Positions 1,511 through 32,335 of a DNA stretch of 64,000 nucleotides are shown here, one piece after another. The notes beneath the pieces are model-generated. The model had not been told where the DNA came from. It did not search any database and saw nothing but the letters and a program-made list of their open reading frames with translations. Numbering within the stretch: position 1 is the stretch's first letter; every line of letters starts with the position of its first letter. The translations under genes were made by a program, and so were the position numbers. The stretch comes from Octopus sinensis (Eukaryota): NCBI RefSeq assembly GCF_006345805.1, contig NC_042999.1:6138001-6202000 (forward strand). The letters are read 5' to 3'.

Positions 1511-1545
1511 ACAGACGAATATTTCGATTCCAGGCAATGACCAGA

Positions 1546-1960
<415 letters not shown>

Positions 1961-8534: not shown

Positions 8535-11355
8535 GCCAGGACAACCTGCCATCCTCTACACACCATCATAAACTGCGAGCAGGGTACAAATTGTTGTCCT
8601 TAAATGCTCGCAGTTTATGCAACAAAATACATTTGTTCAACACCTACGTCAGAAGTATTGACCCTGACTTCATCACTGTCACGGAAACATGAGCGCATTC
8701 CTTACTCTGTGATGGGGTTTTCAACATCACGGGGTACAACCTCTTCCGTAAGGACCGCACTAACCGCCGTGGTGGTGGTGTGATGGTCTACGTTCGTTCA
8801 AATTTTTTGGTAATTCCTTGTGCCGATTTGAACGAATCACAAGAAGAAGTTTTTTTCTGTGACGTACATATGACCATGTCAACACTCCTGCTTGGCGTTG
8901 TTTATCGTCCCCCAAATTACCATCAGGATACACAGCTTTGCAACATCCTCCGAGCTGCTGCCAGGAAAACAGCCACTTATGTGTTTATTGCAGACGATTT
9001 CAATCATCCTGAGATCGATTGGTAAACCTTCCATTGGCCACAGAGTGCAAACGATTTTGTTGAGCTTGTGCTGGACTCAAACTGGTCACAAGTAGTCACC
9101 TCTCCAACAAGAGGCGACAACACCTTGGACCTGCTCTTCACCACAACTCCTGAAGCGGTTATCAATTGCACTACGGAGGAACCTCTAGGTGACTCTGATC
9201 ATGCTATGATCATCGCCAATCTGGCTCTTGCGGGCAACAAACACCTGAACCATCTCCAATCTGCTTCCTTCGATTGGAAGAGAGCAGATTGGAACCTGTA
9301 CCACACTGAACTACAGCACCCAAACTGGCGTGAATTCTACAACTCTGGAGATGTGAATACTATACTCCAGAGTATCCTGGACTCAATATGGGCAGCATGT
9401 GCAGCATCAGTGCCACGTAAACAAAAAAAGAAGAACCACCCCAAAAGGGCAATTTGGGAAACTTCAGCGGTCCGACTTGCCAGGAAGGAACGTCGGACTG
9501 CTGAACAGGAATACAAGTTGCATAAATCAGACACCAACAGGAAAAAGCGGAATAAATCCTCCAACCATCTCAAGCAAGTGACAAAAAATGCAGTGCTTGA
9601 ATTTGAACAGTGCATAGCAGCCAATCCTGACAGCAAGGTTTTCTGGAAATATGTGCATTCAAAGCAGAGACCTCACTCTCCAGTGGGCCCTCTTCGCAAC
9701 CCTCACACAAACCAGATCACTGACGACCCCAAGGAATGCGCAGAACTCATTGCCGAGTGCTATGCAAACATATTCACTGTTGAAAGTCAAAATGTACCAT
9801 CTTCACCATCACTAACAGCAAACTCCATAACAACTATGGAATTTACACCTGCAATGCTGCGACGTCACCTTCAAAATAAGCGCAACTATGCCTCCCCTGG
9901 TCTCGATGGAGTTACATACCTGCTTCTCAAACGTGGCAGGCACTTCCTTTTACACCAGCTTTCTATTTTCTTCCAGTACTGTCTCAACAATGGTGCTACT
10001 CCGGAGCAGTGGAAAACTGCCAGTGTCATTCCTCTGTTCAAAAAGGGCGACCGCACATCACCTGTCAACTATCGCCCAGTCAGTCTCACTAGCTGTATTG
10101 CAAAACTGATGGAATCGTGTGTCAGAGAAACACTCTGGAACTTCTGGAGCTCTCACAGTCTCATCCGACCCTCACAATATGGATTTGTCCCTAACTCCAG
10201 CTGCAGTGACCAGCTTGTCGAGTTCCTTGAGGACATTACTCAGATCACTGACAGTGGCTCATGGGTGGATGTTGTCTACCTTGACTTTGCTAAGGCTTTC
10301 AACTCTGTGCCACACAAAAGGCTTATGGTGAAACTCTCTGCAATGGGTGTGGGGGATGACCTTTTTAACTGGTTGAAATCCTTCATCCTCAGCCGAAAGG
10401 AGGTAGTCACAGTTCTAGGACAGCACTCTACACCATATGAGATGTCATCGGGTGTACCACAGGGATCTGTCCTTGGTCCCCTCCTGTTTGTGGCATACAT
10501 TAATGACATAGATGCCAATTTAAAGAATGCCACAGTATTGAAATATGCAGACGACATCAAGCTGTACCTTGAAATTAAGAGGACTGATCCTGATGTCTAC
10601 AACTCTTTCCTGCAATCAGACCTAGACACAATGCAGCAATGGATCACAGACTGGCAACTGAAACTGGCTGTGGACAAGTGTACCACCATGCATTTTGGGA
10701 GAAAAACCCTGCGTCCACATACTCCCTCCACAACACTGATATCAAGAAATCCTCTTGCGAGCGTGACCTAGGCATCACTGTCAGCAGTGATTTGCGTTGG
10801 ACAAAGCATATCTCTAAAATTGTCAAGAAGGCCGAGGGTGTCTTGGCATCACTCAGCAAGACTTTTGTTAGCCGCTCTCCAGCCATCTATTTAAAACTGT
10901 ATACAGCTATGGTACGACCACACTTGGAATTCGCATCATCAGTTTGGAATCCCTATCTTGCTCAGAACATTGACCTCCTGGAATCTGTCCAGAGACGTGC
11001 AACCAAACGCATACCCTCCATCAGACACCTACCATATTCTGAGCGCCTTGTTTCCCTGGGCATGGATTCACTGAAGCTCCGGGGTCTGGCGACGGACTTG
11101 GTAAACACCCACAAGGTTATCAACCACCTCACCAACAACAACACTGAACACCTTTTTGATCTCCATGTGTCTAACACACGTGGACATGCCTACAAAGTCA
11201 GAAAACAACACAGCTCCCATGACTTTCGGAAACATTTTTTCACGCTCAGAGTTGCTGAAGCGTGGAACAAACTGCCTGCGTCAGTTGTTGACTGCCATGA
11301 CACTGCATCCTTTAAGGCCCTCATGCTTTCCGAAATCCGCCGAAACTACACCTGA
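8507..11355 (+). pseudogene. CR1 ORF2 (APE+RT), disrupted
   Basis: One frame from 8507 with stops at 8690 and 9023, then a 1-nt deletion in the A-run 10702-10706 shifting to the 10639..11355 frame. Confidence 0.9.
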
Positions 11356-14005: not shown

Positions 14006-17000
14006 TAAATACTTCAATTATAAGGGTGTAGTTGATTAGTAAATTCTGCCTAAAAAATATGAAACTGGATCAATTTCGACAGTGACTGTATAATAAAGAA
14101 AGGATGAACGTTTAAGTCAAGCTTGATAGAAATGTCTGCAGTCGTGTTCACAATAGACGCAGGAGTGGCTGTGTGGTAAGTAGCTTGCTTACCAACCATA
14201 TGGTTCCAGGTTCAGTCCCACTGTGTGGCACCTTGGGCAAGTGTCTTCTACTATAGCCTCGGGCCGACCAAAGCCTTGTGAGTGGATTTGGTAGACGGAA
14301 ACTGAAAGAAGCCCATCGTATATATGTATATATATATATATTTGTATGTCTGTGTTTGTGTGTCCCCCCCCCCCGACATTACTTGACAACCGATGCTGGT
14401 GTGTTTACGTCCCCGTAGCCTAGCGGTTCGGCAAAAGGGACCGATAGAATAAGTACTAGGCTTACAAAGAATAAGTCCTGGGGTCGATTCGTTTCGGCTA
14501 AAGGTGGTGCTCCAGCATGGCCGCAGTCAAATGACTGAAACAAAACAAAAAAGAAAAGAGCCATTAATAACCATCGCATAGATTGTGAATCATGATCCTC
14601 ATTTAAGGTCCATTTTTTTACATGAGTTGGCACGACCAGGAGCTGTACCAGCTTCTATAACCTATTCTTGGTTTGGTTTCTACAGCTGGATGCCCTTCCA
14701 AACTCAACCACTTTACAGAGCAGTCAGTTGAAGAACCAAAATATCTTATTTCTTCAAATAAGAATTTAACTGGAAAGTTCAATACAGAGTTGTATGAAAC
14801 GACTGACGTATCTGCCTTGGAATTCAACATTATTTGATGTAACGTTAACAACAGAACTGAATCAGGAGTTACAAATTCTTAGAGATGCTGGAAAGAGTTT
14901 TACTAAATCTTAGTGTTACAGTTGTTTAAATTGTTTGAATATTTATTGAATGTCGTCATCATCATCATCATCAGCCGTTCAAGAATTTGGACCTGGAGAT
15001 TTCCATTTCCAGCGACTTCAAGGGCCACCTCCCAGTGGTGTCGGGCGTCAACGAAGAGCCCTCGACTACAACAAGACGACCAAAGATTTTTTTCTTCTTT
15101 TTCCAAGGTCTGGGGTTTCCGGCCCCTAAGCCCTAGACCATCACCTAATCACCCCTACCCATCTTGTTGCTTAACAACAACAACAACAACAGCAGCAGCA
15201 TCTAACATCCATTGCCCACACTGGCATGGGTTGGACAGTTCGGCCAGGGCTACACCAGACTCCAGTCTGATTTGGCATGGTTTCTATGGCTGGATGCCCT
15301 TTCTAACACCAATGACTCCAAGAGTGTAAGGACTGCTTTTACATGCCACTGGCATGGGTACCAGTTGCATAGCACCAGTGTCTGCCACAACTATAATTTC
15401 ATTGGGCTTGATGGCTCTTCTTCTCAAGCTCAACATAATGTCAAAGGTCTTGGTCATTTGTCATTGCCTCTGTGAGGCCCAACACTCAAAAGGTGCTTTT
15501 TACGTGCCACCAGCACAGGTGCTAATTACTTTAGAATAATTACTTAAAGCAGGAAAATTGACACATAAACCAAATAATAGAGAGAAGATGCTGCAAAACA
15601 GATATGATCAATAAGCAAATAGGAGTCTGGCATCAGAGCCTCATCAGATATCAAAGAAAGACCAGATTATTTAAATATAATCTCCAGATGTTTGATACCT
15701 TCAAGATAAGAAAAAATAAATCGGTTTGCCATTTTTTTAATTGTATCTCTTTTACTTGTTTCAGTCATTTGACTGTGGCCATGCTGGAGCACCGCCTTTA
15801 GTCGAACAAATCGACCTCGGGACTTATTCTTTGTAAGCCCAGTACTTATTCTATTGGTTCCTTTTGCCGAACTGCTAAGTTACGGGGACGCAAACACACC
15901 AGCATCGGTTGTCAAGTGATGTTGGGGGTGACAAACACAGACACACAAACATACACACACACACGTACATATATATATATATATATACATATATACGACA
16001 GGCTTCTTGCAGTTTCCGTCTACCAAATCCACTCACAAGGCTTTGGTTGGCCCGAGGCTATAGTAGAAGACACTTGCCCAAGGTGCCACGCAGTGGGACT
16101 GAACCCGGAACCATGAGGTTGGTAAGCAAGCTACTTACCACACAGCCACTCCTACGCCTATCCCATATATATTATTACAAAACACTGTTTAATTAAATAA
16201 CAACACCATTTCTGTTTCGTACTTTAATACTTTTTGAATAACAATTCCAATGATTTTATCCCAAAATTTTCATGAAACACCCAGAGCCCCAAGGGATTTA
16301 AGAACTGTTTGTTGTTATCATACCTGGTGACTGTCATTAAAACTTATGCAGGTGATAAGGGAAAGTAAACAGTAAATTGGGGGCATTCATGCCTTTCTCA
16401 GAGCTTTTCATAATCCTACTGCAACATCTTTTCCCTGCCTAATCTCAAACCCACAATTCAAATAAACCATTGGTTCTTAACTTTTTTTTTCTTGTAGGTG
16501 TAGGACGTGGCTGTGTGGTAAGTAGCTTGCTTACCAACCACATGGTTCCAGGTTCAGTCTCACTGGCTGGCACCTTGGGCAAGTGTCTTCTACTGTAGCC
16601 TCGGGCCGACAAAAGCCTTGTAAGTGGATTTGGTAGACGGAAACTGAAAGAAGCCTGTCGTATATATGTATGTATATGTGTGCGTTTGTTTGTGTGTCTG
16701 TGTTTGTCCCCCCCAACATCGCTTGACAACCGATGCTGGTGTGTTTGCGTCCCTGTAGCTTAGCGGTTCGGCAAAAGTGATCGATAGAATAAATACTAGG
16801 CTTACAAAGAATAAGTCCTGGGGTCAATTTGCTCGACTAAAGGCGGTGCTCCAGCATGGCCACAGTCAAATGACTGAAACAAGTAAAAGAATAAAAAGGG
16901 AGAGTGTTCCTGTTTTGCGTAGTTGTCGTGCCTAGAGTCCACATAAGTGGCAAATGAGTCACCACAACTAAACCAACTTAACATAGATGATCATTTATAA

Positions 17001-18099
17001 CTTTTACTCTAAAAACGGATTGCATAAGCTTTTAACTGGGAAATAATAAAAAAATTAATAAATACAAACGTTATAAATTTACTTCTTACATTCCAAGTTA
17101 ATGACTTCCCGGTGCCTGATGAGATCTCATTTTATTTTAATAACCATCACTAGTTTTATCAGGTATAATACCTATTTCTTTATTATCCACAAGAGGCTAA
17201 ACATAGATGGGACAAACAAGGACAGACAAAGGAATTAAGCCGATTACATCGACCCCAGTGCATAACTGGTACTTTATTTATCGATCCCGAAAGGATGAAA
17301 GGCAAAGTTGACCTTGGCAGAATTTGAACTCAGAATGTCAGACGAAATACAGCTATGCATTTCACCTGACATGCTAACGTTTCTGCCAGCTTGCCGCCTT
17401 TTTATCAGGTATAATATATTTAGTTTGTTAATTATGTTAGCTCACTGCTCCCAAAAGCCTAACGCCCCCTTGTGGGGCAATACTGCCCATGTTCAGAACT
17501 TCTGAAACCCTTTGGTTTTAATTGAAAAGTTTGTGCCAAGGCCATCAGTTCCTTTCCTACAAAACTTCACAGCTGAACAAACAAACATTTTTTCACCACA
17601 ACCAGCAGACCCCACGTACCAAAGTCTGGAGGTTCCATTCTCTTACTGCAATTAACGCATAAAGCTAGACGGCCCACGATCATAGCCGTCAGGCACAGGT
17701 CAACTGGCCACTATCGTGGCCCAGATAGATGCATTTAATTCATGTACGTTTGTTGGGGGTCTAATGTCACTCAAATGCTCCGATACCTCCCCCACCCCCC
17801 AGAATGCAAGGGGACTAATAGTTCAACTAATGACTTTCCACATGATGTAAAACTTTCCACCATTATATACTAAGAAGATCATCATCATCATCGTTTAACG
17901 TCCGCTTTCCGCGCTAGCACAGGTTGGATGGTTCGACTGGGGTCTGGGAAGCCAGGAGGCTACACCAGGCTCCAGTCTGATCTGGCAAGGTTTCTACAGC
18001 TGGATGGCCTTCCTAATGCCAACCACTAAGAGTGTAGTGGGTGCTTTTTACGTGCCACCAGCACAAGGGCCAGTCAGGCAGCACTGGCATATATAATAT

Positions 18100-18135
<36 letters not shown>

Positions 18136-19084
18136 ATATATATCATCATCATCATTTAGCGTCCGTTTTCCATGCTAGCACAGGTTGGATGGTTCGACCG
18201 GGGTCTGTGAAACCAGGAGGCTGCACCAGGCTCTAGTCTGATCTGGCAGTGTTTCTACAGCTGGATGCCCTTCCTAACGCCATACTCCGCGAATGTAGTG
18301 GGTGCTTTTTATGTGCCACAGGTACACCTGTGCCGGTGATTTTAACTATTTTTTTGTTGTTTTTTTTTATGTATTCATGATAGTCTCATTTTCATAAAAT
18401 GTGTTCAGCAGTCCATGCTATGTAAGTGCCAAATCCCAGCGCTTTAGGGGTTAACAAAACTGAAAAAAAAACTAGATTCCTTACCTCTCTCAAGCTGTCA
18501 AGATATTTCTTCAAACAAGCAGTAACAAATTGAATTATCAATGAAACAATCGTGATGATGATGATGGGGATTACAACAATTAACCAACTGAATTGTAATT
18601 ACAAAATAGTATTAAGTTCAACTAATCACAGAATCTGGAATTACTGAACAGGAGCCCCAGGGATAATCTAAGGGAGATAACTCAGTCTGAATTGTAAAAC
18701 GATGATTTTGTACTTGATTGAAATGCATTGTGGGTAACTTATTTTATCGACCCACCCCACAGCCACACCTTACTTAGGCGACATTTGAACTCAGAAAAGC
18801 AAAAAGCAAACATTTCTGTCTCCTATCGTCTGTCATCTCCATTCCAACCACAAACTGTAAGAATAGCTTCAAAAATTATTTTACATACGTGACTGAGTAG
18901 TGAAGATACTTACCCAAGGGACTGAACCTGAGACCACAGGTCGAGAAGCAAACCTCTTATCCACACAGCCACGCCTGTTGCTGCTTTCACTACAGTTCGA
19001 CTGTTGCATGCTCCAGCCGTCTTCGGGTGTCTTTTGTTGAACTCATTTGTTGTATTGGAATATCTTTATTTGATCAAAGAGGGG

Positions 19085-19380
19085 ACACTGTTCTCATAGC
19101 AGAGTAGATAAGGACATAAGTTAACGCAGTGCTGTCACCCAGACGTTCTGAGTTCAATCCAAGGCAAGATGCTAAGATAATTCACAAAAAAAATCCCCTG
19201 AAGCAAAAATGTCACAAAACGCAAGGCATAGAATGAGAATAGTGGGCCCCAATGGGTCAAATGAAGGGTCGGGTTTGATATTCCAATACAGCAACTGAGT
19301 TCAGCACAAGACACCTGAAGAAGTTGAAATGCAGTGAAAGCAACAATCAAGATAAAGACACCAGTCTGACGGTCATAAAC
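19085..19380 (+). mobile_element. Family G tRNA-headed element with deleted hammerhead; inverted partial copy at 18975-19075
   Basis: TAGCAGAGTAG..GTTCTGAGTTCAATCC head; GACACCTGAAGAAG[deletion]TTGAAATGCAGTGAAAGC. Confidence 0.6.
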
Positions 19381-20300: not shown

Positions 20301-20679
20301 ATCATCATCATCGTTTAACGTCCGTTCTCCATGCTGTCATGGGTTGGACGGTTCGACCGGGGATCTGGGAAGCCAGAAGGCTGCACCAGGCTCCAGTCTG
20401 ATCTGGCAATGTTTCTACAGCTGGATGCCCTTCCTAACGCCAACCACTCCGTGAGTGTAGTGGGTGCTTTTTACGTGCCACCCGCACAGGTGCTAGGCAA
20501 GGCTGGCAACGGTCGGATTGGTGCAATTTACGTGCCACCGGCACGGAAGCCAGTCGAGGCGGCGCTGGCATCGGCCACGATTCGGATAGTGCTTTTTACG
20601 TACCACCAGTCCAGGGGTCCTGGCATCTGCCGGGTGCCAGTCATAGGATTGGTTCAATTTCGATTTCGATTAATTATTG
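20301..20679 (-). mobile_element. Family C element (RTE 3'-UTR type). Other - copies: 6838-7134, 7439-7831, 14615-14720, 15195-15520, 17877-18090, 18141-18325, 19678-20090, 21622-22012, 25167-25445, 25983-26297, 48330-48470, 59190-59640
   Basis: (TGA)n tail, CCAACCCATGCTAGCATGG, GGCGTTAGGAAGGGCATCCAGC, variable ~60-bp GGCACGTAAAAAGCACC units. Confidence 0.88.
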
Positions 20680-21007: not shown

Positions 21008-21087
21008 TCAGCATTCGTCTCCATCTTCTTCCATTTCTTTGAGAATTTCAAAGTAGTCACTAGCTTTGATCTTTCGAGGAATGATAT
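21008..21087 (-). CDS. CHRAC1: CHRAC1 coding exon 3 (DIIPRKIKASDYFEILKEMEEDGDEC*)
   Basis: Acceptor gtttatttttcag|AT, phase 1 completes GAT; matches human DILPKKILASKYLKML; TGA at 21008-21010; total 106 aa. Confidence 0.93.
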
Positions 21088-21361
21088 CTGAAAAATAAAC
21101 GAAACATTTTTTTCTTAATTATTAAAATACAGTATGGAAAAATATGTAAATATCATCAACGACAACAACAAGTGTATTTTTTCTAAGATAAACACTGCCA
21201 GATCAGACTGGAGCCTGGTGCAGCCTCCTGGCTTCCCAGACCCTGGTTGAACCGTCCAACCCATGCTAGCATGGAAAACGGACGTTAAATGATGATGATG
21301 AGAGAGTTTTTGCTGCACAATCCAATGACTTAACAGGTGAAATGTCTTATTTCATATCATG

Positions 21362-21540
21362 TATGTCGGACTGGTGACCTCACCTTGGTTGTAGCTTTCA
21401 CAATGTTTTGGCTGTGTATGCTCCAGCCTTCTTCAAGGGCCTTGTGATTCATTTTACTGCTTTACCTAAGATTGAGCTTAGAACCTTTAGGTGTCTGCAT
21501 TAACTAGTGCCTTCACCCACTATGCTATGCCTCTAGGCAG
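21362..21540 (-). mobile_element. Family G element with decayed hammerhead, in CHRAC1 intron 2
   Basis: TAGCATAGTGG head, then UUGAAGA-A-GGCUG(GAGCAUACA)CAGCC-AAAA-CA-UU-GUGAA. Confidence 0.6.
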
Positions 21541-22692: not shown

Positions 22693-22862
22693 ATGTAATG
22701 GCAGACAAGATACTGCTAAGCATTTCACCTGGCATATTAACGATTCTGCCAGCTTGCCACCTGATGATGGACTTTTATATTATATATTAGTTTGAGTGGT
22801 GTCATCATTTTGGTCATACACAACCGAAATATAGTGAAAAGCAATAACCAAGAATGAGGCCT

Positions 22863-24410
22863 AATAACCAAAGTCCTAATAAGTAGGAAAGTAGACAAGT
22901 CACAAACGCCTTCAGGTAGATGGCCCTGCTCGATCTGTAAAAAAGGTGTAGGTAGAAACTCTATAAGGTGCACCAAGTGCAAGCTATGGACACATAAGAG
23001 GTGTAGCAATGTCAAAGGAAGGCTAACTAGGAAAATAGTTTTTGTATGTGGCAGATGCTCAGGAGCAATAAACACTGAAAATGTGCAGAGAACAACTTCT
23101 GCCACATTCCAGGAGGAAAAACTAGAAGTAGTTGATAGCTTCCGTTACCTAGGTGACCAAATCAGTAGCGGGGGTGGGTGTGCTGAAATGTAACTGCTAG
23201 AGTAAGAATAGCCTGGGCAAAGTTTAGAGAGCTCTTACCCCTGCTGGTGACAAAAGGCCTCTCGCTCAGAGTAAAAGGCAGACTGTATGATGCATGTGTA
23301 CGTATAGCCATGCTACATGGTAGTGAAACATGGGCTGTGACTGCTGAAGATATGTGTAAGCTCACAAGAAATGAAGCCAGTATGCTCCGATGGATGTGTA
23401 ATGTCAGTGTTCATAATCAACAGAGTGTAAGTACCTTGAGAGAAAAGTTGGACCTAAGAAGCATCAGTTGTGGTGTGCAAGAGAGACGTCTGCACTGGTA
23501 TGGGCATGTGACAAGAATGGGTGAAGATAGTTGTGTGCAAAAGTGCCACACTCTAGCAGTTGAGGGAACCTGTGGAAGAGGTAGACCCAGGAAAACCTGG
23601 GACAAGGTGGTGAAGCACGACCTTCGAACTTTAGGTCTCACCAAGGAAATGACTAGAGACCGAGACCTATGGAAGTATGCTGTGCGTGAGAAGACCTGGC
23701 AAGACCAGTGAGAACAGTCAAAATCAAACCAAATCAACATCAGTGGAAATTGCAGCTGTGGTTAAGCGAACCATCCGATCGTTTGTCCGTTGCCAGCCTC
23801 GCCTGGCCCCCGTGCCGGTAGCACGTAAAAGCGCCATCCGTTCGTGTCCGTTGCCAGCCTCGCTTGGCACGTAAAAGCACCATCCGCTCGTGTCCGTTGC
23901 CAGCCTCGCCTGGCCCCCGTGCCGGTAGCACGTAAAAGCACCATCCGTTCGTGTCCGTTGCCAGCCTCGCCTGGCCCCCGCGCCAGTAGCACGTAAAAGC
24001 ACCATCCGTTCGTGTCCGTTGCCAGCCTCGCCTGGCCCCCGTGCCAGTAGCACGTAAAAGCACCATCCGTTCGTGTCCGTTGCCAGCCTCGCCTGGCCCC
24101 CGTGCCAGTAGCACGTAAAAGCACCATCCGTTCGTGTCCGTTGCCAGCCTCGCCTGGCCCCCGTGCTGGTGGCACGTAAAAACACCGTCCGTTCGTGGCC
24201 GTTTGCCAGCTCTGTCTGGCACTGTGCAGGTGGCACGTAAAAAGCACCCACTACACTCACGGAGTGGTTGGCGTTAGGAAGGGCATCCAGCCATAGAAAC
24301 ACTGCCAAATCTGACTGGGCCTGATGAAGCCTTCCGGCTTCACAGACCCCAGTTAAACCGTCCAACCCATGCTAGCATGGAAAACGGACGCTAAATGATG
24401 ATGATGATGA
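22863..24410 (+). mobile_element. 5'-truncated RTE-clade LINE with PHD-like finger, 61-bp minisatellite 3' UTR and (TGA)n tail
   Basis: KTKVL..VDSFRYLGD..LHGSETW..RGRPRKTW; 1-nt deletion near 23188; ATGAGGCCT duplicated at 22854 and 24407. Confidence 0.9.
23771..24230 (+). repeat. 61-bp minisatellite, about 7.5 units
   Basis: Unit starts at 23771, 23834, 23880, 23941, 24002, 24063, 24124, 24185. Confidence 0.95.
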
Positions 24411-24743
24411 GGCCTCTACTCCACCTAATGTCACCTAATTCGTCTCGCACAGAATTGCCTCTCACCATCAATTGATTTGTTAATCTTTTTGATCAACACA
24501 AAAAAAATCCCATTAATTACACAAGTAAGTTATCCAGTTACAATTACAGATGAACCACAAACCACATAGCTAATGCCTCTGGGACTAAACGTGCTTTTTA
24601 CGTGCCACCAGCATGGAACACACATCTTTATCTTTGTTCAGTCATTAGGCTGCAACCAGGGGAAATGGTGCTGGAGAATTGTCTTGAAGAATTTTAGTCA
24701 AATGAATCGACCCCAGTGCCTATTTTTTTTAATTCTATGAATC

Positions 24744-24874
24744 TCTCGGGCATATGGCTTAGTGTTTAAGAGCACAGGCTACTAACCCCAAAATTCCAAG
24801 TTCGATTCCTGGCAGTGACTTGAATGATAATAATAACAACATCGAAAAATACCTTAGGAATGAGAACCCAGGTT
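24744..24874 (+). mobile_element. Family D SINE 5' part (tRNA-like head); another fragment at 1520-1680
   Basis: TGGCTTAGTGT A-box, AGTTCGATTCC B-box, (AAT)n, CATCGAAAAATACCTTAGGAATGAGAACCCAGGTT. Confidence 0.75.
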
Positions 24875-26334
24875 CAGTTTCCGTCTACCAAATCCACTCA
24901 CAAGGTTTTGGTCAGCCTGAGGCTATAGTAGAAGACACTTGCCCAAGGTGGCACACAGTGGAACTGAACCCGGATCGTGTGGTTGGTAAGCAAGCTACTT
25001 ACAACAGAAAGTTTAACAAATAACGTTTCCGCTTACCACCCAATGTTGAAAGAATGGCTTTAGCTTTTTGGAATGAAATAGATTGGCCTTCTGAATTCTT
25101 TACCACATTATCCATTAAGAACGGTCCCATGTTTCACTTGGTGCAGAAAATCATTCAAGGTTAAACCATCATCATCATTGTTTAACGTCCGCTTTTTGAA
25201 CAAGTTAACTGAGGGCTGGCGAACCAGATGGCTGCACCAGGTTCCAATCTTGATCTGGCAGAGTTTCTACAGCTGGATGCCCTTCCTAACGCCGACCACT
25301 CCGAGAGTGTAGTGGGTGCTTTTTATGTGCCACCAGCATGGGACCAGTCAGGCGGTACTGGCAACTGCCATGCTCAAATGGTGCTTTTTATGTACCACTG
25401 GTACAGGAGCCAGTCCAGTGGAACTGGCAACGACCTCGCTCAAATCAATTGAAGTATTAAAAATCTCCAGGGAAGCAATTTTTTGCGTTAACATTGCATA
25501 ATTTCCGATGTCACTCGCATTAATAGGAAGAAATCACCATTAAAGAAAATCACAGAACAAAAAAAGTCAGTTTGTAATGGGGACACCTGTTTGCTGTGGC
25601 AGGTGATTTCGACACGCAATGGGTTAACCATCTATCTATTCATGTGTGTGTCGGTGTTTGTCTCATATCACCGCTTGACAACCGGTGTTGGTCTATTTAC
25701 GTTCTTGTAACTTGGCCTGTTCAAAAAACGAAACCGATAGAATAACAGGTTTAAATAAAGATAAGTTCTGCAATCGATACATTCGACTAAAAGTTCTTCA
25801 ATGCGGTGCCCCAGCATGACCGGAATTTAATGACTGAAACAAGTAAAAAATAAAAGACAAAGAAAATTAAATCTTACGTTTCTATCATTTTTAGACGACT
25901 TCAATTTCGTGGTATAAAGGGGGTTATCTCCCCTAGACTAGAATTTATTTTTTAATAAAACTCCTAAACTGAACGTAGTTTCTATCATCATCATCATCAT
26001 CATCGTTTAACGTCCGCTTTCCATGCTAGCATGGGTTGGACGGTTCAACTGGGGTCTGGCAAGCCCGAAGGCTACACCAGGCCAGTCAGATCTGGCAGTG
26101 TTTCTACAGCTGGATGCCCTTCCTAACGCCAACCACTCCGAGAGTGTAGTGGGTGATTTTATGTGCCACCGACACAGGTGCCAGACGAGGCTGGCAGACG
26201 GCCACGCTCGGATGGTGATTTTTTATGTGCCACCGACACAGGTGCCAGACGGCCACGCTCGGATGGTGTTTTTTTATGTGCCACCGACACAGGTGCCTAG
26301 AAAAATGAATTCACACCTCCATTAATAGTTATAA

Positions 26335-26704: not shown

Positions 26705-26825
26705 CTTGTAAAAACTGTAGAGTTTCTTCTGTATTTACAACTTCAGCTAAATCTCCATATTGGAGCTGTTTCCCGTCACGCCCATTGGTGAGTGACACTC
26801 GGGCTAAATTTTGCACAAAAAACTC
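26705..26825 (-). CDS. CHRAC1: CHRAC1 coding exon 2 (EFFVQNLARVSLTNGRDGKQLQYGDLAEVVNTEETLQFLQ)
   Basis: Acceptor cttttaatag|GAG, donor CAAG|gtaac; 121 nt, phases 0 and 1; continues the histone fold (ELFVQ..LxYxDLA..FQFL in human). Confidence 0.93.
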
Positions 26826-27962
26826 CTATTAAAAGAAAGGACATATTTAATAAACTGAAATACCGTAATTAGATGAAAATAATTCAAAATCCGTTCATAT
26901 TATGTTCTTAAAATGTAAATTAATAAAGATTTTGTTTTTAGTGTATTTGGTAGATGGTAATTAAAAGAAGCCCATCGTATGTGTGTGTGCTTTATGATCT
27001 TGCCTTGACATCATGTATTAGCCAGGGGCATCATCATAATGCAAGCAACATCCTCTGTTTCCAGTCTGCTATAAAAGCATGCCTGGTTATGAGAAACTAT
27101 TACCTACTTGGAAACAGGTAGAGTTGGCAACAGGAGAGGCATTCATTCATGGGAAAATCTAGCTCAACAAATTCCATACAAATATGGCAAATGTTGAGGA
27201 TTCTTACTTATTACAAAGTTTGTGTTAGGAAGGTCAATGATGGGTTTTTTCAGTATTTCACACAAGGTCCTTACCCTGTAGAATTACAGCTATTTTTTTT
27301 TTAATTAAAACGGAGGTGCATGGCTTAGTGGTTAGGGTGTTTGACTCATAAGTAGTTTCAATTCCTGGAGTGGACAATGCATTGTACTCTTGAGCAAAAC
27401 ACTTGACACCAGTCCACTCAGCTGGTAAAAATGAGTCACCCTGCAACAGATCAGCATCCCATTTGTTATCATCATCATCATCACAGAGAAATATACACGC
27501 CAAAGAAATAATTGTAAAATTTAATGCAAATAGATGTTTTTAAAGCATCACTGATAATAGCTGTTAACCTTTAAGACTGGTAGAGATCATCGACCGAGAC
27601 AAACTGGAATCACAAAAACAGGTTTTGTCCTTCAGGCCAAACTAATTCTTTAATTTGGCTTCCATATCAATTCTCTGTTGATTTGTTAAAATCAGCAGGG
27701 GACACACATGTTAGACATGCTTTAGGGAGAATATTAGGAGGATTGACACCAGACATAGAGAAAACAAAATTACCTGAAGAACAAAACCTAACCCTAAATT
27801 TAGTTCTATATTTAAGAGATGAGGAATTATGTACATTATTTACATTTGACAGATATTTGTCCTGCAGTTAAGACAAAATAGCTGGTTAGTATAATTCCAT
27901 AACTACACTGTCGTGATATCATGTTAAATTCAAGACAGCAAATCTGTGGATGCCAATTTCTC

Positions 27963-28054
27963 AATTGAATAAGTAGTTCATTATTTGACGGAGAATTGAA
28001 TAAGTAGTTCGTTATTTGACGGATAATTGAATAAGTAGTTCATTATTTGACGGA
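27963..28054. repeat. 31-bp tandem repeat x3
   Basis: AATTGAATAAGTAGTTC(A/G)TTATTTGACGGA at 27963, 27994, 28025. Confidence 0.95.
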
Positions 28055-28205
28055 TATTTGTCCTCATCTTTGTTGTTAACACAACATTTCGGCTGATATA
28101 CCCTCCAGCCTTCATCAGGTGCCTTGGGGAAATTTCAAACCTGGGTTCTTATTCTTAAGGGATTTTTCAATATTATTATTATTATTCAGGTCACTGTCTG
28201 GAATC
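28045..28205 (-). mobile_element. Family D SINE 3' part containing a hammerhead motif
   Basis: Overlaps the 24744-24874 sequence from GATTCC to AACCCAGGTT, then continues into the ribozyme and tail. Confidence 0.8.
28078..28123 (-). ncRNA. Minimal type-I hammerhead ribozyme motif
   Basis: GGCAC-CUGAUGA-A-GGCUG(GAGGGUAUAU)CAGCC-GAAA-UG-UU^-GUGUU: intact core, 5-bp stem II, 5-bp stem I including two G-U pairs. Confidence 0.8.
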
Positions 28206-29128
28206 AAACAAGATGAGGACAAATATCCGTCAAACATAAATAATGTAAAACCTAAATTGATCAAGAAATGATGAGACGAAATCAGGAGGAAAAAATACAA
28301 TCCTGTCTTAGAGTTATTGGAACACTGATTGTTAGTTGGTGTGTGTGTATGCCTTTTGGCAATCAAAAGAGAAAGGTGTATGCATGTCTGTAACTTGCCA
28401 GCCTCGCCTGGCCCCCATGCCGGTGGCACGTAAAAACACCATCCGTTTGTGGCCATTTGCCAGCTCTGTCTGGCACCTGCAGGTGGCATATAAAAAGCAC
28501 CCACTACACTCACAGAGTGGTTGGCGTTAGGAAGGGCATCCAGCCGTAGAAACACTGCCAAATCTGACTGGGCCTGATGAAGCCTTCCGGCTTCACAGAC
28601 CCCAGTTAAACCGTCCAACCCATGCTAGCATGGAAAACAGACGCTAAATGATGATGATCTAATTTACCAATAATTAAATATTTCAATTTCAAATTAGAAT
28701 TGCTATATTTAAATCAGTAATTCATTGATATCATTATGGAAAGGGACGAGGGCCACAAGTTTCCATTCTGTAAACCAGTGGTTTTCAGTCAGGGTCCACG
28801 TAACTCCTAGTGGTCTCATAAGATTTTGGGGGCTCTACAGAAGCAAAATAAACTGGGGATCCACAATAGTTTTCTTAAGGGTTCATGGAAAAATTTAGAT
28901 GTATTTATTGATTCATTGCAAGAGACAGCAACGTTTCTTTCTCTCGTGTTTTACATAGGCACAGGAGTGGCTGTGTGGTAAGTAGCTTGCTAACCAACCA
29001 CATGGTTCCAGGTTCAGTCCCACTGCGTGGCATCTTGGCCAAGTGTCTTCTGCTATAGCCCCGGGCCGACCAATGCCTTGTGAGTGGATTTGGTAGATGG
29101 AAACTGAAAGAAGCCTGTCATATATATG

Positions 29129-29165
<37 letters not shown>

Positions 29166-30526
29166 ATATGTTTGTGTCTGTGTTTGTCCCCCTAGCATTG
29201 CTTGATAACCGATGCTGGTGTTTACGTCCCCGTCACTTAGCGGTTCGGCAAAAAGAGACCGATAGAATAAGTACTGGGCTTACAAAGAATAAGTCCCGGG
29301 GTCGATTTGCTCGACTAAAGGCGGTGCTCCAGCATGGCCGCAGTCAAATGACTGAAACAAGTAAAAGAGTAAAAGAGCAAAAGAGAGTCCAACATATTTT
29401 CACCCACTGAAATATGTTCCCTCAGAGAGGGTCATCTCAGACTTACACAAGTGAACGTGTGAAAAACAAAACAGGAATTTTGAAAGAAGTATCCATAAAA
29501 CTAGATTTTAAACACAGAATGGGGCACAACGTCGGTATAAGTACCGGATACATTTCAAGAAAGTGTTTTTTTATATATATGGGGGGTTTGTGTTAGGGTT
29601 ATGGATGGAAGAAAAGGGTTTCTGTTATCTTCAGAAATGTAAACAAAGCCACGTGTGTACTTATACCGAAGGATCCACCAGAATAAAATAGTAATCAAAG
29701 GGGTCCATAGATGAAAAATGGATGAGAACTCGTGCTGTAAACCAAAACACGCGGATGTAGAGCAATAAATAACAACAGATTTGATTGCAAAAGGAAGTAA
29801 ATTCATTTATTTTGGAGTTAGTTTTGGCTTACTGAAGTCTCGGTTTACGAATTTAATTCATTCTTGAAAGCCGTTCGCTACTTGAAATGTTTTTCTTATA
29901 GGGAATTTAAGAGAAGGTACGGCAAACTCGAACCAAGTGATGTAAATTGAGTGAAAGCTAGACAACAACTGACGCTTTTCCGCAAATATAAACTCCAAGC
30001 TTCTTTCGCCAACCGTTGTTGCTGACTTATGTGTTCGTTATTCGAGACACTGTTCGTGATGAGAAGTGTTCGTAAACGAAGGTTCCACTGTGAATATATA
30101 TTGAGGCTTGCGTTGATGGAGATATGGAAGTTTCTGGCAATAAATACACATTCAGTAGTTACCAGCGACTGATGGAATGGTGAGAATAAATAGAAATATT
30201 CGGCCGAAACGATGCCAAAATAATAAGGAAAACTGGAAAGATTAATTTAACAAAAGGAGCTAATGGTAACCAAAAAAAAACACTAAACAGAGAGAAAGCA
30301 AAGTATTTTAGTGTCAACATTTCAGTTTATTTTTTCCACCTTTTAATTAATGTCTAAAACTTAATGAGGTTTTGTTCAGCGAGGGTTCAATATAAAATAA
30401 ATGATAGGGATTTGCACTGAGGGGACTAAATATCGGGTACAGCCCTTCGCCGAATGGTTCCTGGGTTATTTTAGAAAAATACTTGGGCAGTAAAGGCTTG
30501 AAAATAATGAATATGATATATTACAG

Positions 30527-30983: not shown

Positions 30984-31103
30984 CGTTGCTTTTCCCGTTA
31001 GAAAAAGGGCTTCTTGACTGATACTGGAAACATCTGGGGAACTTTTCATTATTGTTTTGACGCGAGAAAGCGGCAAAGCACAAAGACTGTTCTTGTCTGC
31101 CAT
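30984..31103 (-). CDS. CHRAC1: CHRAC1 coding exon 1 (MADKNSLCALPLSRVKTIMKSSPDVSSISQEALFLTGKAT)
   Basis: ATG at 31103; 40 codons matching the recalled CHRAC1 motif LPLSR(I/V)xxIMKSSP(E/D)VSSIxQEAL; phase-0 donor ACG|GTAAAG. Confidence 0.93.
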
Positions 31104-31375: not shown

Positions 31376-32335
31376 CCTTACCTGCACAAGTTTGCACACA
31401 CCATCGACTTTGTTTCCTCATATCTTCCAGAAAAATGGATATTTTTTAATGAATTTTTTTTTACAAATCTGCTTCAGATGGTGTAGATTCCGATTATATG
31501 GGAATTTGTTGTGAAAGGATTTTTCCGAGGGTGATGGGTTTCGGAAAATTCACAGGAGTCGGTTTTTTCTTCACTCGTAACTATCAGAAAAATAAGTAAT
31601 TTATTATCTTTCAGGGTGTGTAGCCTTACCTACACAAGTGCACACACCACCGACTTTGTTTCCTCATATCTTCCAGAAAAATTGGTATTTTTTAATGAAT
31701 TTTTTACAGGAGTGGCTGTGTGGTAAGTAGCTTGCTTACCAACCACATGGTTCCGGGTTCAGTCCCACTGCGTGGCACCTTGGGCAAGTGTCTTCTGCTA
31801 TAGCCTCGGGCCGACCAATGCCTTGTGAGTGGATTTGGTAGACGGAAACTGAAAAAAGCCCGTTGTATATATGTATAATTGTGTGTGTGTATATGTTTGT
31901 GTGTCTGTTTGCTCCCCCAACATTGCTTGACAACCGATGCTGGTGTGTTTACGTCCCCGTCACTTAGCGGTTCGGCAAAAGAACCGATACAATAAGTACT
32001 AGGCTTACAAAGAACAAGTCCTGTGGTCGATTTGATCGACTAAATGTGGTGCTCCAGCATGGCCGCAGTCAAATGACTGAAACAAGTAAAAGAGTAAGAA
32101 GTAAATAGTAAATCCGCTTCAGTTGGTGTAGATTCCGATTATATGGGAATTTGTTGTGAAAAGATTTTTCCGAGGGTGATGGGTTTCGGAAAATTCACAG
32201 GAGTCGGTTTTTTCTTCACTCGTAACTTATCAGAAAAATGGGTAATCTATTATCTTTCAGAGTGAGTAGATTACGATTATATCGAAATTTGATGTGAAAA
32301 GGAAAATGGGGAACATACAGACACACATCACGTTT
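31376..32335. repeat. Tandem duplication of a ~250-bp non-autonomous DNA-element unit; second unit split by a family B SINE; inverted relative at ~32625-32880
   Basis: CACACC..GACTTTGTTTCCTCATATCTTCCAGAAAA and GGTGTAGATTCCGATTATATGGGAATTTG each occur twice. Confidence 0.75.

What the first reader, a model, noticed from the sequence alone, without database searches (positions are those of the whole stretch)
28078..28123. Intact hammerhead core lies sense within CHRAC1 intron 1
Seen: the motif is on the minus strand, like CHRAC1, with predicted cleavage between 28083 and 28082, ~1.25 kb upstream of exon 2. Stem III is AUGU rather than palindromic ACGU. Inference: the pre-mRNA contains a potential self-cleavage site that could affect splicing or turnover, probably only if it dimerises.
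Basis: partly seen in the sequence, partly recalled or inferred. Interest (0 to 1): 0.7.

Follow-up and report, generated by a model that had tools for sequence, protein, structure and literature searches.

The report
Decayed transposon hammerhead in octopus intron
The hammerhead-ribozyme motif in intron 1 of the octopus CHRAC1 gene is real, but it is one slightly decayed copy of a common short retroposon that carries a minimal, dimer-dependent hammerhead, so it is most likely an inert relic rather than a regulator of the gene.

Summary
On the minus strand, 28123..28078 reads GGCAC|CUGAUGA|A|GGCUGG-AGGGUAUA-UCAGCC|GAAA|UG|U|U^GUGUU. Every hammerhead core base is present. The motif lies sense in the first coding intron of CHRAC1 (Octopus sinensis), 1,257 nt upstream of exon 2.

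It is not a chance match and not gene-specific. It is the central module of a dispersed short retroposon with seven loci in about 64 kb, five of them in this window. Only this copy keeps the whole core. The three closest copies each carry different mutations, and their consensus is a textbook Penelope-type minimal hammerhead: a bulged base after A9, G10.1-C11.1, a 5-bp helix I and a palindromic ACGU helix III. The AUGU here is the CpG-to-TpG decay product of ACGU.

That change removes the only possible (intermolecular) helix III. A local hairpin also competes with helix I. No second intact copy is nearby. The 1.67-kb segment holding the motif is absent from the orthologous intron of O. bimaculoides.

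Self-cleavage that affects CHRAC1 is therefore unlikely. The more interesting lead is the family itself: an apparently abundant cephalopod SINE-like element with a tRNA-like head and a minimal hammerhead.

The parts
28078..28123 (-). Minimal type-I hammerhead motif (copy c1). Helix I is 28123-28119 with 28082-28078. CUGAUGA is 28118-28112. The bulged A is 28111. Helix II is 28110-28105 with 28096-28091. GAAA is 28090-28087. UG (15.2/16.2) is 28086-28085. U16.1 is 28084 and U17 is 28083. Predicted cleavage is 28083^28082.
   Evidence: Sequence. It is the only descriptor hit in the window, with 0 hits in 300 shuffles. The isolated 46-mer folds with helices I and II.
28071..28086 (-). Competing local hairpin UGUUGU-GUUA-ACAACA. 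It contains the cleavage site and sequesters the 3' strand of helix I.
   Evidence: It is present in both the minimum-free-energy and the centroid structures of the 81-nt and 150-nt contexts.
28046..28204 (-). Direct part of retroposon copy c1, 5'-truncated inside the B-box-like region. In order: GTTTGATTCCAGACAGTGACC, (AAT)n, the body ...CCCTTAAGAATAAGAACCCAGGTTTGAAATTTCCCC, the hammerhead, and the tail AACAACAAAGATGAGGACAAATATCCGTCAAA.
   Evidence: It is 87-89% identical to L002 14157-14040 and L002 25377-25233.
28205..28247 (+). Inverted 43-nt copy of the element's 3' terminus, abutting the 5' end of the direct copy (head-to-head inverted repeat).
   Evidence: Inverted repeats I1 and I2; blastn; it matches the tails of the L002 copies.
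27963..28060 (-). Tandem array of a 31-nt unit, 3.2 copies, that starts inside the tail (ATCCGTCAAATAATGAACTACTTATTCAATT).
   Evidence: Tandem Repeats Finder; direct repeat family D1.
27832..27863 (-). Second copy of the tail end (AGGACAAATATCTGTCAAATGTAAATAATGTA), probably the true 3' terminus of the composite insertion.
21356..21457 (-). Family copy c2 (older subfamily), sense in CHRAC1 intron 2. Its core is dead (UUGAAGA, AAAA) and 15.2/16.2 is CA. The ortholog is present in O. bimaculoides (L002 16293-16394).
18960..19047 (-). Family copy c3, downstream of the CHRAC1 stop codon. Its core is mutated (CCGAAGA, GAAC). The ortholog is L002 17778-17862.
19295..19374 (+). Family copy c4; helix II is deleted.
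22815..22864 (+). Weak family copy c5 (antisense, intron 2). The 5' core box is lost. The ortholog is L002 15419-15352.
   Evidence: E = 0.089 in the window; 3.5e-4 for the ortholog.
24703..24875 (+). 5' part of another family copy: a head with A-box- and B-box-like motifs, (AAT)n, and the start of the body. It is orthologous to the head of L002 14806->14021. Its hammerhead and tail have been deleted in O. sinensis.
   Evidence: Sub-threshold Rfam tRNA match of 16.4 bits, E = 0.57.
27741..29411 (.). 1.67-kb segment that holds c1 together with two other SINE-like repeats. In O. bimaculoides about 6 bp take its place at the orthologous position (L002 11277-11284).
30984..31103 (-). CHRAC1 coding exon 1 (MADKNS...GKAT), followed by the donor GTAAAG.
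26705..26825 (-). CHRAC1 coding exon 2.
21008..21087 (-). CHRAC1 coding exon 3, including the stop codon.

Best explanation
The motif is the hammerhead module of one 5'-truncated, slightly decayed copy of a dispersed short retroposon of Octopus genomes.

Full-length members of the family have this order:
- a ~75-nt head with A-box- and B-box-like motifs (weakly tRNA-like);
- a variable (AAT/GAT)n microsatellite;
- a ~50-nt body;
- a 46-nt minimal type-I hammerhead;
- a ~45-nt tail ending in (TAAATAATG)n;
- flanking target-site duplications of 10-12 bp.

The ancestral hammerhead of the subfamily was GACAC|CUGAUGA|A|GGCUGG..UCAGCC|GAAA|CG|U|U^GUGUU. This is the design described for Penelope-like elements (PLEs). 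It has no helix III hairpin. Catalysis needs two copies to pair their palindromic ACGU, forming a double hammerhead in which each core cuts the other copy's site.

The copy landed, or was retained, in sense orientation in CHRAC1 intron 1 and is transcribed passively with the pre-mRNA. CpG decay changed ACGU to AUGU, which destroys the self-complementary helix III. The 3' strand of helix I is also captured by a local hairpin, and no intact partner lies nearby. It is therefore most likely catalytically silent and without effect on CHRAC1.

What is shown: the sequence anatomy, family membership, the consensus, absence at the orthologous O. bimaculoides site, and the predicted energetics.
What is inferred: lack of cleavage in vivo, mobilisation by PLE machinery, and Pol III transcription of master copies.
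For: 1. Family membership. Homologous modules lie at 21457-21356, 19047-18960, 19295-19374 and 22815-22864 in the window, and at 14138-14032, 25331-25226, 16293-16394, 17778-17862 and 15419-15352 in the O. bimaculoides locus L002.

2. Ancestral state. The three closest copies carry different lesions: c1 has CG>TG; L2a has G12>U and one helix II change; L2b has A15.1>G and CG>CA. Their majority consensus is a complete minimal hammerhead with ACGU. TG and CA are the two CpG-decay products.

3. Match to the published PLE minimal hammerhead. An unpaired base between A9 and G10.1, the G10.1-C11.1 pair, a 4-5 bp helix I, a longer helix II and palindromic 15.2-16.2 are the features listed in PMC4209133.

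4. Retroposon hallmarks. Target-site duplications ATGAATCTCT (L2a) and AGAAGAATATTT (L2b). Head, microsatellite and body recur at three independent loci. An inverted, extremely 5'-truncated copy sits head-to-head with c1, and the copies are associated with microsatellites. Both of these are described for PLE insertions (PMC8557442).

5. Loss of function. AUGU self-duplex +2.6 against ACGU -1.7 kcal/mol. Double hammerhead -17.0 against 2 x monomer -24.8 for c1, compared with -22.3 against -25.2 for the consensus. With flanks: -19.0 against -32.6. A competing hairpin forms in context.

6. No conservation. The 1.67-kb segment is absent at the orthologous O. bimaculoides site.

7. No selection needed. 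c1 differs from the subfamily consensus at about 5 sites in 100 (my count on the alignment), so an untouched 13-base core is expected in roughly half of such copies.

8. Low activity of the class. Single PLE minimal hammerheads show no detectable cleavage and dimers only low cleavage in vitro. In the one PLE tested, no RNA-seq read ends were found at the hammerhead site (PMC11167929).
Against: - No cleavage assay or RNA-end data exist for this site, so residual activity cannot be excluded. It could be aided by proteins or by pairing in trans with transcripts of other copies.
- No PLE reading frame was found in the 64-kb window or the 26.6-kb ortholog. The only reverse transcriptase seen is an APE-type LINE. 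The 9-nt tandem repeat at the 3' end is more typical of LINE-dependent SINEs.
- tRNA-likeness of the head is weak: 16.4 bits, E = 0.57 in one copy, nothing in another, and ARAGORN finds none.
- There is no compensatory covariation in the seven copies aligned, so helices I and II rest on conservation and on the consensus only.
- Rfam does not recognise the motif.
- The polarity of the 1.67-kb indel is unresolved: it may be an insertion in the O. sinensis lineage or a deletion in O. bimaculoides.
Confidence: 0.8

Rival explanations
1. The motif is an active cis-acting ribozyme that cleaves CHRAC1 pre-mRNA, as a homodimer of two pre-mRNAs or with help from proteins, and so tunes splicing or turnover.
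For: The core is complete and helices I and II can form. The orientation is sense in the intron. Conserved intronic hammerheads are known in amniotes (cited in PMC7229834).
Against: - Helix III cannot form in cis, and the AUGU self-duplex is predicted unstable.
- A competing hairpin forms in context.
- The site is not conserved in O. bimaculoides.
- It is one decaying member of a repeat family.
- The class has very low activity even when intact and dimeric.
- From my own knowledge, not checked here: ribozymes placed in introns impair splicing only when they cleave fast, because exons stay tethered to the polymerase (Dye et al. 2006; Fong et al. 2009).
Confidence: 0.06
2. The motif is a chance match to the hammerhead consensus in AT-rich intronic DNA.
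For: Rfam gives no hit. The folding z-scores of the segment are unremarkable (-1.4 to 0).
Against: There are 0 descriptor hits in 300 shuffles. Homologous copies elsewhere have a consensus that is a complete minimal hammerhead. The same design occurs as a repeat family in DNA of another animal.
Confidence: 0.01
3. The family is an ordinary LINE-dependent SINE, not PLE-dependent. Its hammerhead serves the SINE's own RNA processing, as proposed for the schistosome Sm-alpha elements. The CHRAC1 copy is still a relic, but the partner and the role of the ribozyme differ.
For: The head has A-box- and B-box-like motifs. The 3' end carries (TAAATAATG)n and there are 10-12 bp target-site duplications. 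An APE-type LINE is present in the window and no PLE was seen. Sm-alpha sets a precedent for a SINE-like element with a hammerhead (PMC6765202).
Against: The hammerhead is of the minimal, bulged, palindromic-helix-III design so far tied to PLEs. c1 carries the head-to-head inverted 5'-truncated copy described for PLE insertions (PMC8557442). The LINE in the window does not share the tail. Cleavage would also remove the 3' tail that a LINE reverse transcriptase would need.
Confidence: 0.25
4. The intact c1 core acts in trans. Its AUGU is Watson-Crick complementary to the ACAU of copy c2 in intron 2 of the same pre-mRNA, so a heterodimer could form in which the c1 core cuts at the c2 site near 21394.
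For: AUGU and ACAU are complementary, with a predicted duplex energy of -0.3 kcal/mol. Both copies are sense in one transcript.
Against: A 4-bp helix at about 0 kcal/mol would have to form across 6.7 kb. Helix I between the c1 5' strand (GGCAC) and the c2 3' strand (GUGAA) would be only 3 bp. The c2 core is dead, so the c1 site itself would stay uncut. The double-hammerhead topology used here is my own inference from Forster et al. 1988, as summarised in PMC4209133.
Confidence: 0.02

Closest known systems
Minimal hammerheads (min-HHR) of Penelope-like retroelements (Cervera & de la Pena 2014, PMC4209133; Lunse, Weinberg & Breaker 2016/17, not readable here)
   Same: The CUGANGA and GAAA boxes. 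An extra unpaired base between A9 and G10.1. The G10.1-C11.1 pair. A short helix I (5 bp) and a longer helix II (6 bp). No helix III hairpin. In the family consensus, a palindromic A-CG-U that allows only a dimeric helix III. Mostly solo, heterogeneous copies scattered through the genome.
   Different: In this copy the palindrome is broken (AUGU). The carrier is a short element with a tRNA-like head, not the pLTR of a reverse-transcriptase/GIY-YIG element. No PLE reading frame was found in the 90 kb examined.
Schistosome Sm-alpha / Sj-alpha SINE-like elements with hammerheads (Ferbeyre et al. 1998; Laha et al. 2000; summarised in PMC6765202)
   Same: A short non-autonomous retroposon with a Pol III-type promoter region followed by a type-I hammerhead, at high copy number.
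   Different: Sm-alpha carries a canonical hammerhead with loop-loop tertiary contacts and a short helix III hairpin, and it is active in vitro and often tandemly arranged. Here the hammerhead is the minimal variant, the copies are solo, and activity is untested.
Metazoan non-LTR retrozymes (Cervera & de la Pena 2020, PMC7229834; Li et al. 2026 preprint, 10.64898/2026.07.22.740005)
   Same: Non-autonomous elements carrying type-I hammerheads, proposed to depend on PLEs. Solo 'monomer' copies are scattered in genomes, including in introns.
   Different: Retrozymes are tandem repeats of about 170-400 bp, each with a hammerhead, that yield circular RNAs. No tandem hammerhead-bearing repeat is present here; the only tandem array is a 31-nt unit without a ribozyme.
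Conserved intronic hammerheads of amniotes (HH9, HH10; de la Pena & Garcia-Robles 2010)
   Same: A sense-strand type-I hammerhead inside an intron of a protein-coding gene.
   Different: Those are single-copy and ultraconserved at orthologous sites, have a stable helix III, and are recognised by Rfam models. This one is a repeat copy, is absent in the sister-genus ortholog, has no helix III, and gives no Rfam hit.

Membership tests
Hammerhead ribozyme (generic) | Conserved core C3 U4 G5 A6 N7 G8 A9 ... G12 A13 A14 A15.1 ... U16.1 H17 | tested here: met
   All positions are present at 28118-28112, 28090-28087, 28084 and 28083 (descriptor). There is one extra A (28111) between A9 and G10.1.
Hammerhead ribozyme (generic) | Three helices I, II and III around the core within one molecule | tested here: not met
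   Helices I (5 bp, 2 G-U) and II (6 bp) can form. Helix III would be A15.1-U16.1 closed by only 2 nt, which is sterically impossible in cis.
Hammerhead ribozyme (generic) | Match to the Rfam covariance models (Hammerhead_1, _3, _II, HH9, HH10) | tested here: not met
   No hit at gathering score or at E<=10. The control shows that Rfam also misses related bulged and minimal variants, so this test has low weight.
Hammerhead ribozyme (generic) | Site-specific self-cleavage | not testable with these tools
   This needs in vitro transcription or RNA-end mapping.
PLE-type minimal hammerhead (PMC4209133) | [quoted passage not shown] | tested here: met
   A at 28111. It is conserved as A (or C in c3) in all copies that keep the region.
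PLE-type minimal hammerhead (PMC4209133) | G10.1-C11.1 pair; helix II longer than usual; helix I 4-5 bp | tested here: met
   G28110-C28091; helix II 6 bp; helix I 5 bp. G-C at 10.1/11.1 in 7 of 7 copies.
PLE-type minimal hammerhead (PMC4209133) | Palindromic 15.2-16.2, so that two copies can build helix III | tested here: not met
   This copy has UG (AUGU), with a self-duplex energy of +2.6 kcal/mol. The feature is met by copy L2a (ACGU) and by the subfamily consensus.
PLE-type minimal hammerhead (PMC4209133) | Genome holds a family of related, variable copies | tested here: met
   Seven independent loci in the window plus L002.
PLE-type minimal hammerhead (PMC4209133) | Located in the pLTR or terminal region of an element encoding reverse transcriptase plus GIY-YIG endonuclease, or demonstrably derived from one | tested here: inconclusive
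   No PLE reading frame among the window ORFs of at least 120 aa; the only reverse transcriptase is an APE-type LINE. Indirect PLE-like signs are the inverted 5'-truncated copy and the association with microsatellites.
Non-LTR retrozyme | Tandem repeats of about 170-400 bp, each with a type-I hammerhead | tested here: not met
   There is only one hammerhead at the locus. The only tandem array is 31 nt x 3.2 without a ribozyme.
tRNA-derived SINE | 5' head derived from a tRNA, with A and B boxes | tested here: inconclusive
   A-box-like TGGCATAGTTG/TGGCTTAGTG and B-box-like GTTCGATTCC are present in full-length copies. The Rfam tRNA match is 16.4 bits, E = 0.57 for one copy and absent for two others. 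ARAGORN finds none. c1 itself keeps only the B-box end.
tRNA-derived SINE | Dispersed copies with target-site duplications and variable 5' truncation | tested here: met
   Target-site duplications ATGAATCTCT and AGAAGAATATTT. c1 and L2b are truncated in the head.
Conserved intronic hammerheads (HH9/HH10 type) | Orthologous conservation of the intact motif in the same intron across species | tested here: not met
   The orthologous position in O. bimaculoides lacks the whole 1.67-kb segment.

The most novel reading that the evidence does not exclude
Octopus genomes carry a very abundant SINE-like family that has not, to my knowledge, been described as ribozyme-bearing. A rough extrapolation from one locus per ~9 kb here gives 10^4-10^5 or more copies. 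Its conserved central module is a Penelope-type minimal hammerhead placed behind a tRNA-like Pol III head. That would make it a PLE-dependent 'SINE with a ribozyme', a cephalopod counterpart of the schistosome Sm-alpha elements. It would seed many introns with sense-oriented ribozyme cores, a few of which (those keeping ACGU and lying near a partner) could cut pre-mRNAs or yield small circular RNAs.
Probability: 0.3. Interest if true: 0.5.

Novelty: new member of a known kind. Interest (0 to 1): 0.25.

Why it matters
For CHRAC1 it matters little: the motif is best read as a dead transposon passenger.

It is a useful caution that an 'intact hammerhead core' in an invertebrate intron is expected by descent from retroposon families and is not in itself evidence of regulation.

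The wider lead is the family. If confirmed genome-wide, a tRNA-headed short retroposon that carries a PLE-type minimal hammerhead would link SINE biology with Penelope-like elements in cephalopods. It would also offer many natural variants (ACGU, AUGU, ACAU) for testing how dimeric minimal hammerheads work, and whether they have any function beyond hitch-hiking.

Tried and rejected
1. Rfam at gathering and permissive thresholds gave no hammerhead. In a control on five metagenomic hammerhead-like motifs, three with a full helix III and two minimal, Rfam was also silent. I therefore do not count the Rfam result against the motif.

2. ARAGORN found no tRNA in the window. Rfam tRNA was only sub-threshold on one head and absent on two others.

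3. Covariation counting on seven copies showed no compensatory change. The sample is too small and too closely related to be informative.

4. The search for a PLE partner failed. Pfam on six window ORFs found only an APE-type LINE reverse transcriptase. Pfam on ORFs next to the same minimal hammerhead on metagenomic animal contigs found host genes and an LTR-type integrase/RNase H, but no GIY-YIG or PLE.

5. I tried to sample more octopus DNA through homologs of the LINE reverse transcriptase. It returned almost only short metagenome contigs, so I abandoned it. That search was poor value.

6. My first idea that the closest copies (L2a, L2b) are lineage-specific insertions was wrong. Their heads and flanks are orthologous to window 24525-24875 and 1508-1700, and their hammerhead parts were deleted in O. 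sinensis. The direction of the 1.67-kb indel around c1 is therefore left open.

7. An apparent similarity between the hammerhead module and the neighbouring ~400-bp SINE at 24875-25006 turned out to be a junction with an unrelated repeat.

8. The paper by Lunse et al. (PMC5785218) is not held.

9. The third contig carrying the identical protein was not returned by the look-up. From the protein's source names I take it to be O. vulgaris.
Full report
**1. The observation**

Read on the minus strand, 28123..28078 is GGCACCUGAUGAAGGCUGGAGGGUAUAUCAGCCGAAAUGUUGUGUU. It parses as a type-I hammerhead:
- Helix I: GGCAC with GUGUU (28123-28119 with 28082-28078; three Watson-Crick and two G-U pairs).
- Core box CUGAUGA: 28118-28112.
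- One extra unpaired A: 28111.
- Helix II: GGCUGG with UCAGCC (28110-28105 with 28096-28091), with an 8-nt loop.
- GAAA: 28090-28087.
- UG: 28086-28085. U16.1: 28084. U17: 28083.
- Predicted scissile bond: 28083^28082.

I wrote a structural descriptor with both core boxes, helix I and helix II of at least 4 bp, an optional bulge, and 0, 2 or 4 nt between A15.1 and U16.1. It finds this site and no other on either strand of the window. It finds none in 300 dinucleotide-preserving shuffles.

Rfam reports no hammerhead at its gathering scores or at E<=10 in a 601-nt slice. I give this little weight. In a control, Rfam was also silent on five other hammerhead-like motifs taken from metagenomes.

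**2. The gene context**

The splice junctions read cleanly:
- exon 1, 31103-30984, donor GTAAAG;
- exon 2, 26825-26705;
- exon 3, 21087-21008.

The spliced 106-aa product is 100% identical to an annotated Octopus protein with the histone-fold domain PF00808. The window is identical over 30 kb to Octopus sinensis GCA_006345805.1, chromosome CM016861.1.

The motif is therefore sense in the first coding intron. It lies 2,860 nt from the donor, and its cleavage site is 1,257 nt from exon 2. Whether a non-coding exon lies further upstream was not tested.

**3. It is a repeat copy**

A blastn of the neighbourhood against the window found a 71-nt homolog at 21375-21444 on the same strand. nhmmer, and then a profile built from the first copies, raised this to five modules in the window:
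- c1, the finding;
- c2, 21457-21356 (-);
- c3, 19047-18960 (-);
- c4, 19295-19374 (+);
- c5, 22815-22864 (+, weak).

Through the CHRAC1 protein I fetched the orthologous O. bimaculoides locus (L002). It holds orthologs of c2, c3 and c5. It also holds two much closer relatives of c1:
- L2a, L002 14157->14021, 89% identical;
- L2b, L002 25380->25190, 87% identical.

That is seven independent loci in roughly 64 kb of orthologous sequence. Only c1 keeps every core base.

**4. The ancestral ribozyme**

The three close copies have different lesions:
- c1 has CG>TG at positions 15.2/16.2, and A>G in helix I, which still pairs.
- L2a has G12>U and one helix II change, but keeps ACGU.
- L2b has A15.1>G and CG>CA.

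Their majority consensus is GACAC|CUGAUGA|A|GGCUGG-AGGGUAUA-UCAGCC|GAAA|CG|U|U^GUGUU.

The older subfamily (c2-c5) has the consensus CUGAAGA-A-GGCUGG..CAGCC-GAAA-CG-U-A^GUGAAAGC, with only three clear helix I pairs.

c1 differs from its subfamily consensus at about 5 sites in 100 (my count on the alignment). An untouched 13-base core is then expected in about half of such copies, so selection need not be invoked.

Counting pairs on seven aligned copies shows conservation (helix II 92.5% paired; G10.1-C11.1 in 7 of 7) but no compensatory change. That is uninformative at this sample size.

**5. Comparison with the known class**

Cervera and de la Pena (PMC4209133) defined the minimal hammerheads of metazoan Penelope-like elements (PLEs) by these features:
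- the two core boxes;
- the G10.1-C11.1 pair;
- a short helix I (4-5 bp) and a longer helix II;
- no helix III hairpin, with palindromic 15.2-16.2 so that two copies form helix III together.

They occur mostly as solo, variable copies. The family consensus here meets every sequence feature. c1 meets all but the palindrome.

Those authors found no detectable cleavage by single motifs and only low cleavage by dimers or trimers. A later review repeats this (PMC6765202). For the one PLE studied biochemically, no RNA-seq read ends were seen at the hammerhead site (PMC11167929).

**6. The carrier element**

The three close copies share more than the ribozyme. Upstream lies a body...ACATCGAAAAATACCTTAGGAATGAGAACCCAGGTTCGAAATTTCCCC. 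Before that is an (AAT/GAT)n microsatellite. Before that is a ~75-nt head with A-box-like (TGGCATAGTTG) and B-box-like (GTTCGATTCC) motifs. Downstream lies a tail, AACAACAAACAAGATGAGGACAAATATCCGTCAAA, followed by (TAAATAATG)n.

L2a is a full-length copy flanked by the 10-bp duplication ATGAATCTCT, with another SINE nested in its microsatellite. L2b is truncated in the head and flanked by AGAAGAATATTT.

c2 also has A-box- and B-box-like motifs just upstream.

tRNA-likeness is only weakly supported: Rfam tRNA 16.4 bits, E = 0.57 on one head, nothing on two others, and no ARAGORN hit.

c1 itself starts inside the B-box region. It is preceded by an inverted 43-nt copy of the element's own 3' terminus (28205-28247). 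It is followed by a 31-nt x 3.2 tandem array that begins in the tail, and by a second tail end at 27863-27832.

Head-to-head inverted 5'-truncated copies, tail extensions and a bias for microsatellites are described as typical of PLE insertions (PMC8557442).

No PLE reading frame was found. The only reverse transcriptase in the window is an APE-type LINE at 9068-10771. The partner therefore remains inferred, and a LINE-dependent SINE is a live alternative.

**7. Can this copy cleave?**

In a double hammerhead, each core acts on the other copy's site, and helix III is the 4-bp duplex of the two A-N-N-U tetramers. This topology is my inference from the model of Forster et al. 1988, as summarised.

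Nearest-neighbour energies, in kcal/mol:

| Quantity | c1 (AUGU) | Consensus (ACGU) |
|---|---|---|
| Tetramer self-duplex | +2.6 | -1.7 |
| Double-hammerhead fold, 46-mers | -17.0 | -22.3 |
| Two separately folded monomers, 46-mers | -24.8 | -25.2 |
| Double-hammerhead fold, with flanks | -19.0 | -24.3 |
| Two separately folded monomers, with flanks | -32.6 | -30.6 |

So the single C>U change costs about 5 kcal/mol in the only active fold.

In 81-nt and 150-nt contexts, the minimum-energy and centroid structures keep helix II but replace helix I with the hairpin UGUUGU-GUUA-ACAACA (28086-28071). This hairpin contains the cleavage site. The z-scores are about 0.

The only other sense copy in the pre-mRNA, c2, has a dead core. 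Its ACAU is complementary to c1's AUGU (-0.3 kcal/mol). In such a heterodimer the intact c1 core would face the c2 site with a 3-bp helix I, across 6.7 kb. I consider that negligible.

From general knowledge, not checked here: ribozymes in introns disturb splicing only when they cleave fast.

**8. Conservation**

In O. bimaculoides the intron aligns on both sides: window 29522-29412 with L002 11168-11277, and window 27740-27501 with L002 11284-11524. The 1,671 bp between them (29411-27741), holding c1 and two other SINE-like repeats, is replaced by about 6 bp. The motif is therefore not a conserved feature of the CHRAC1 intron.

I cannot say whether this is an insertion in one lineage or a deletion in the other. 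My first guess, that the close copies are lineage-specific, was wrong. The heads and flanks of L2a and L2b are orthologous to window 24525-24875 and 1508-1700, and their hammerhead parts were deleted in O. sinensis.

Identity between copies (87-89%) is close to the interspecies identity of the flanking intron (90-92%). The subfamily therefore spread around or before the split of the two species.

**9. A wider look**

One scan of metagenome contigs with CTGANGANGGCTGGN{7,10}CAGCCGAAA gave more than 120 matches. They fall into two groups:
- Hammerhead-like motifs with a full helix III hairpin, on contigs that I take to be prokaryotic or viral from their sequence make-up only (not checked).
- A repeat family, CUGAAGA-A-GGCUGG-UGUU..CCAGCC-GAAA-UA-U-U-GUAACAACGCC, on contigs that also carry animal genes (TGF-beta, exostosin, protein kinase).

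The second group has the same bulged minimal design, with a palindromic AUAU. The design is therefore shared with at least one other animal genome present in host-associated samples. No PLE reading frame and no B-box-like motif lay next to those copies either.

**10. Verdict**

The motif is real, and by descent it belongs to the known class of minimal, dimer-dependent hammerheads of retroelements.

The interpretation that it may affect CHRAC1 is not supported. It is a single, CpG-decayed, non-conserved copy with no usable helix III and a competing fold, in a class that is barely active even when intact.

Interest in the finding itself is low. The family — an apparently abundant short retroposon with a tRNA-like head and a minimal hammerhead in cephalopods — is a moderately interesting lead. 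It needs a genome-wide census and a check against repeat libraries, neither of which could be done here.

Noticed in passing
window 28395-28658, with about 25 further copies (e.g. 24141-24405, 20304-20560, 25996-26251, 61090-61344): A very abundant ~260-bp SINE-like repeat. Read through, it produces the spurious ORFs '...DALPNANHSVSVVGAFYVPPA...' that dominate the ORF list.
   Followed up: partly
window 23770-24250: An internal part of that repeat is amplified into a tandem array with a 61-nt period. This gives three overlapping ORFs of 160-213 aa with repeated 'GAGARRGWQRTRTDGAFTCY' units (matches spaced 61 nt apart; ORFs).
   Followed up: no
window 28963-29381, 31706-32101, 16502-16898, 14142-14561, plus about 12 copies of its last 135 nt (e.g. 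24873-25006): A second SINE-like family of about 400 bp. It contains CAGTTTCCATCTACCAAATCCACTCACAAGG and a tRNA-like GCCACGCAGTGGGACTGAACCCGGAACCATGTGGTT segment. It may correspond to one of the octopus SINEs named in 1994 (OK, OR1, OR2), but this could not be checked.
   Followed up: no
window 7941-11355 (+): A LINE remnant with an APE-type endonuclease fragment and an RVT_1 reverse transcriptase. Its closest database relatives are short metagenome contigs.
   Followed up: partly
window 1464-1865 (+): The N/D-rich 133-aa 'ORF' is simply the (AAT/GAT)n microsatellite of a family copy orthologous to L002 26127->25190. The hammerhead and tail of that copy are missing in O. sinensis.
   Followed up: yes
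window 28087-28084 (c1) and the c2 module within 21356-21457: The two sense copies in the same pre-mRNA carry the complementary CpG-decay products AUGU and ACAU at helix III, so they could pair with each other although neither can pair with itself.
   Followed up: partly
loci L015, L019, L021, L024, L027, L044, L048 and about 40 others (metagenome contigs): A dispersed repeat family with a bulged minimal hammerhead, CUGAAGA-A-GGCUGG..CCAGCC-GAAA-UA-UU, followed by GUAACAACGCC. It lies on contigs that carry animal genes (TGF_beta, Exostosin, Pkinase), so this is host DNA of some invertebrate in host-associated metagenomes. It shares the 'AACAAC' stretch downstream of the cleavage site with the octopus family.
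   Followed up: partly
loci L005, L006, L008, L012, L020, L038, L098 and others (metagenome contigs): Many hammerhead-like motifs, CUGAYGA-U-GGCUGG..CCAGCC-GAAA, with a proper helix III hairpin and also an extra base after A9. L098 has three within 1.7 kb. Rfam did not report the three tested.
   Followed up: no
L002 14534-14522, and about 25700-25535 by my estimate from the print: Runs of N (assembly gaps) lie inside or next to the microsatellites of the family copies in the O. bimaculoides assembly. The duplicated head fragment at 14521-14483 looks like an assembly artefact around the first gap.
   Followed up: no
window 26195-26297: A 51-nt unit repeated twice at 98% identity, inside a copy of the abundant SINE-like repeat.
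   Followed up: no
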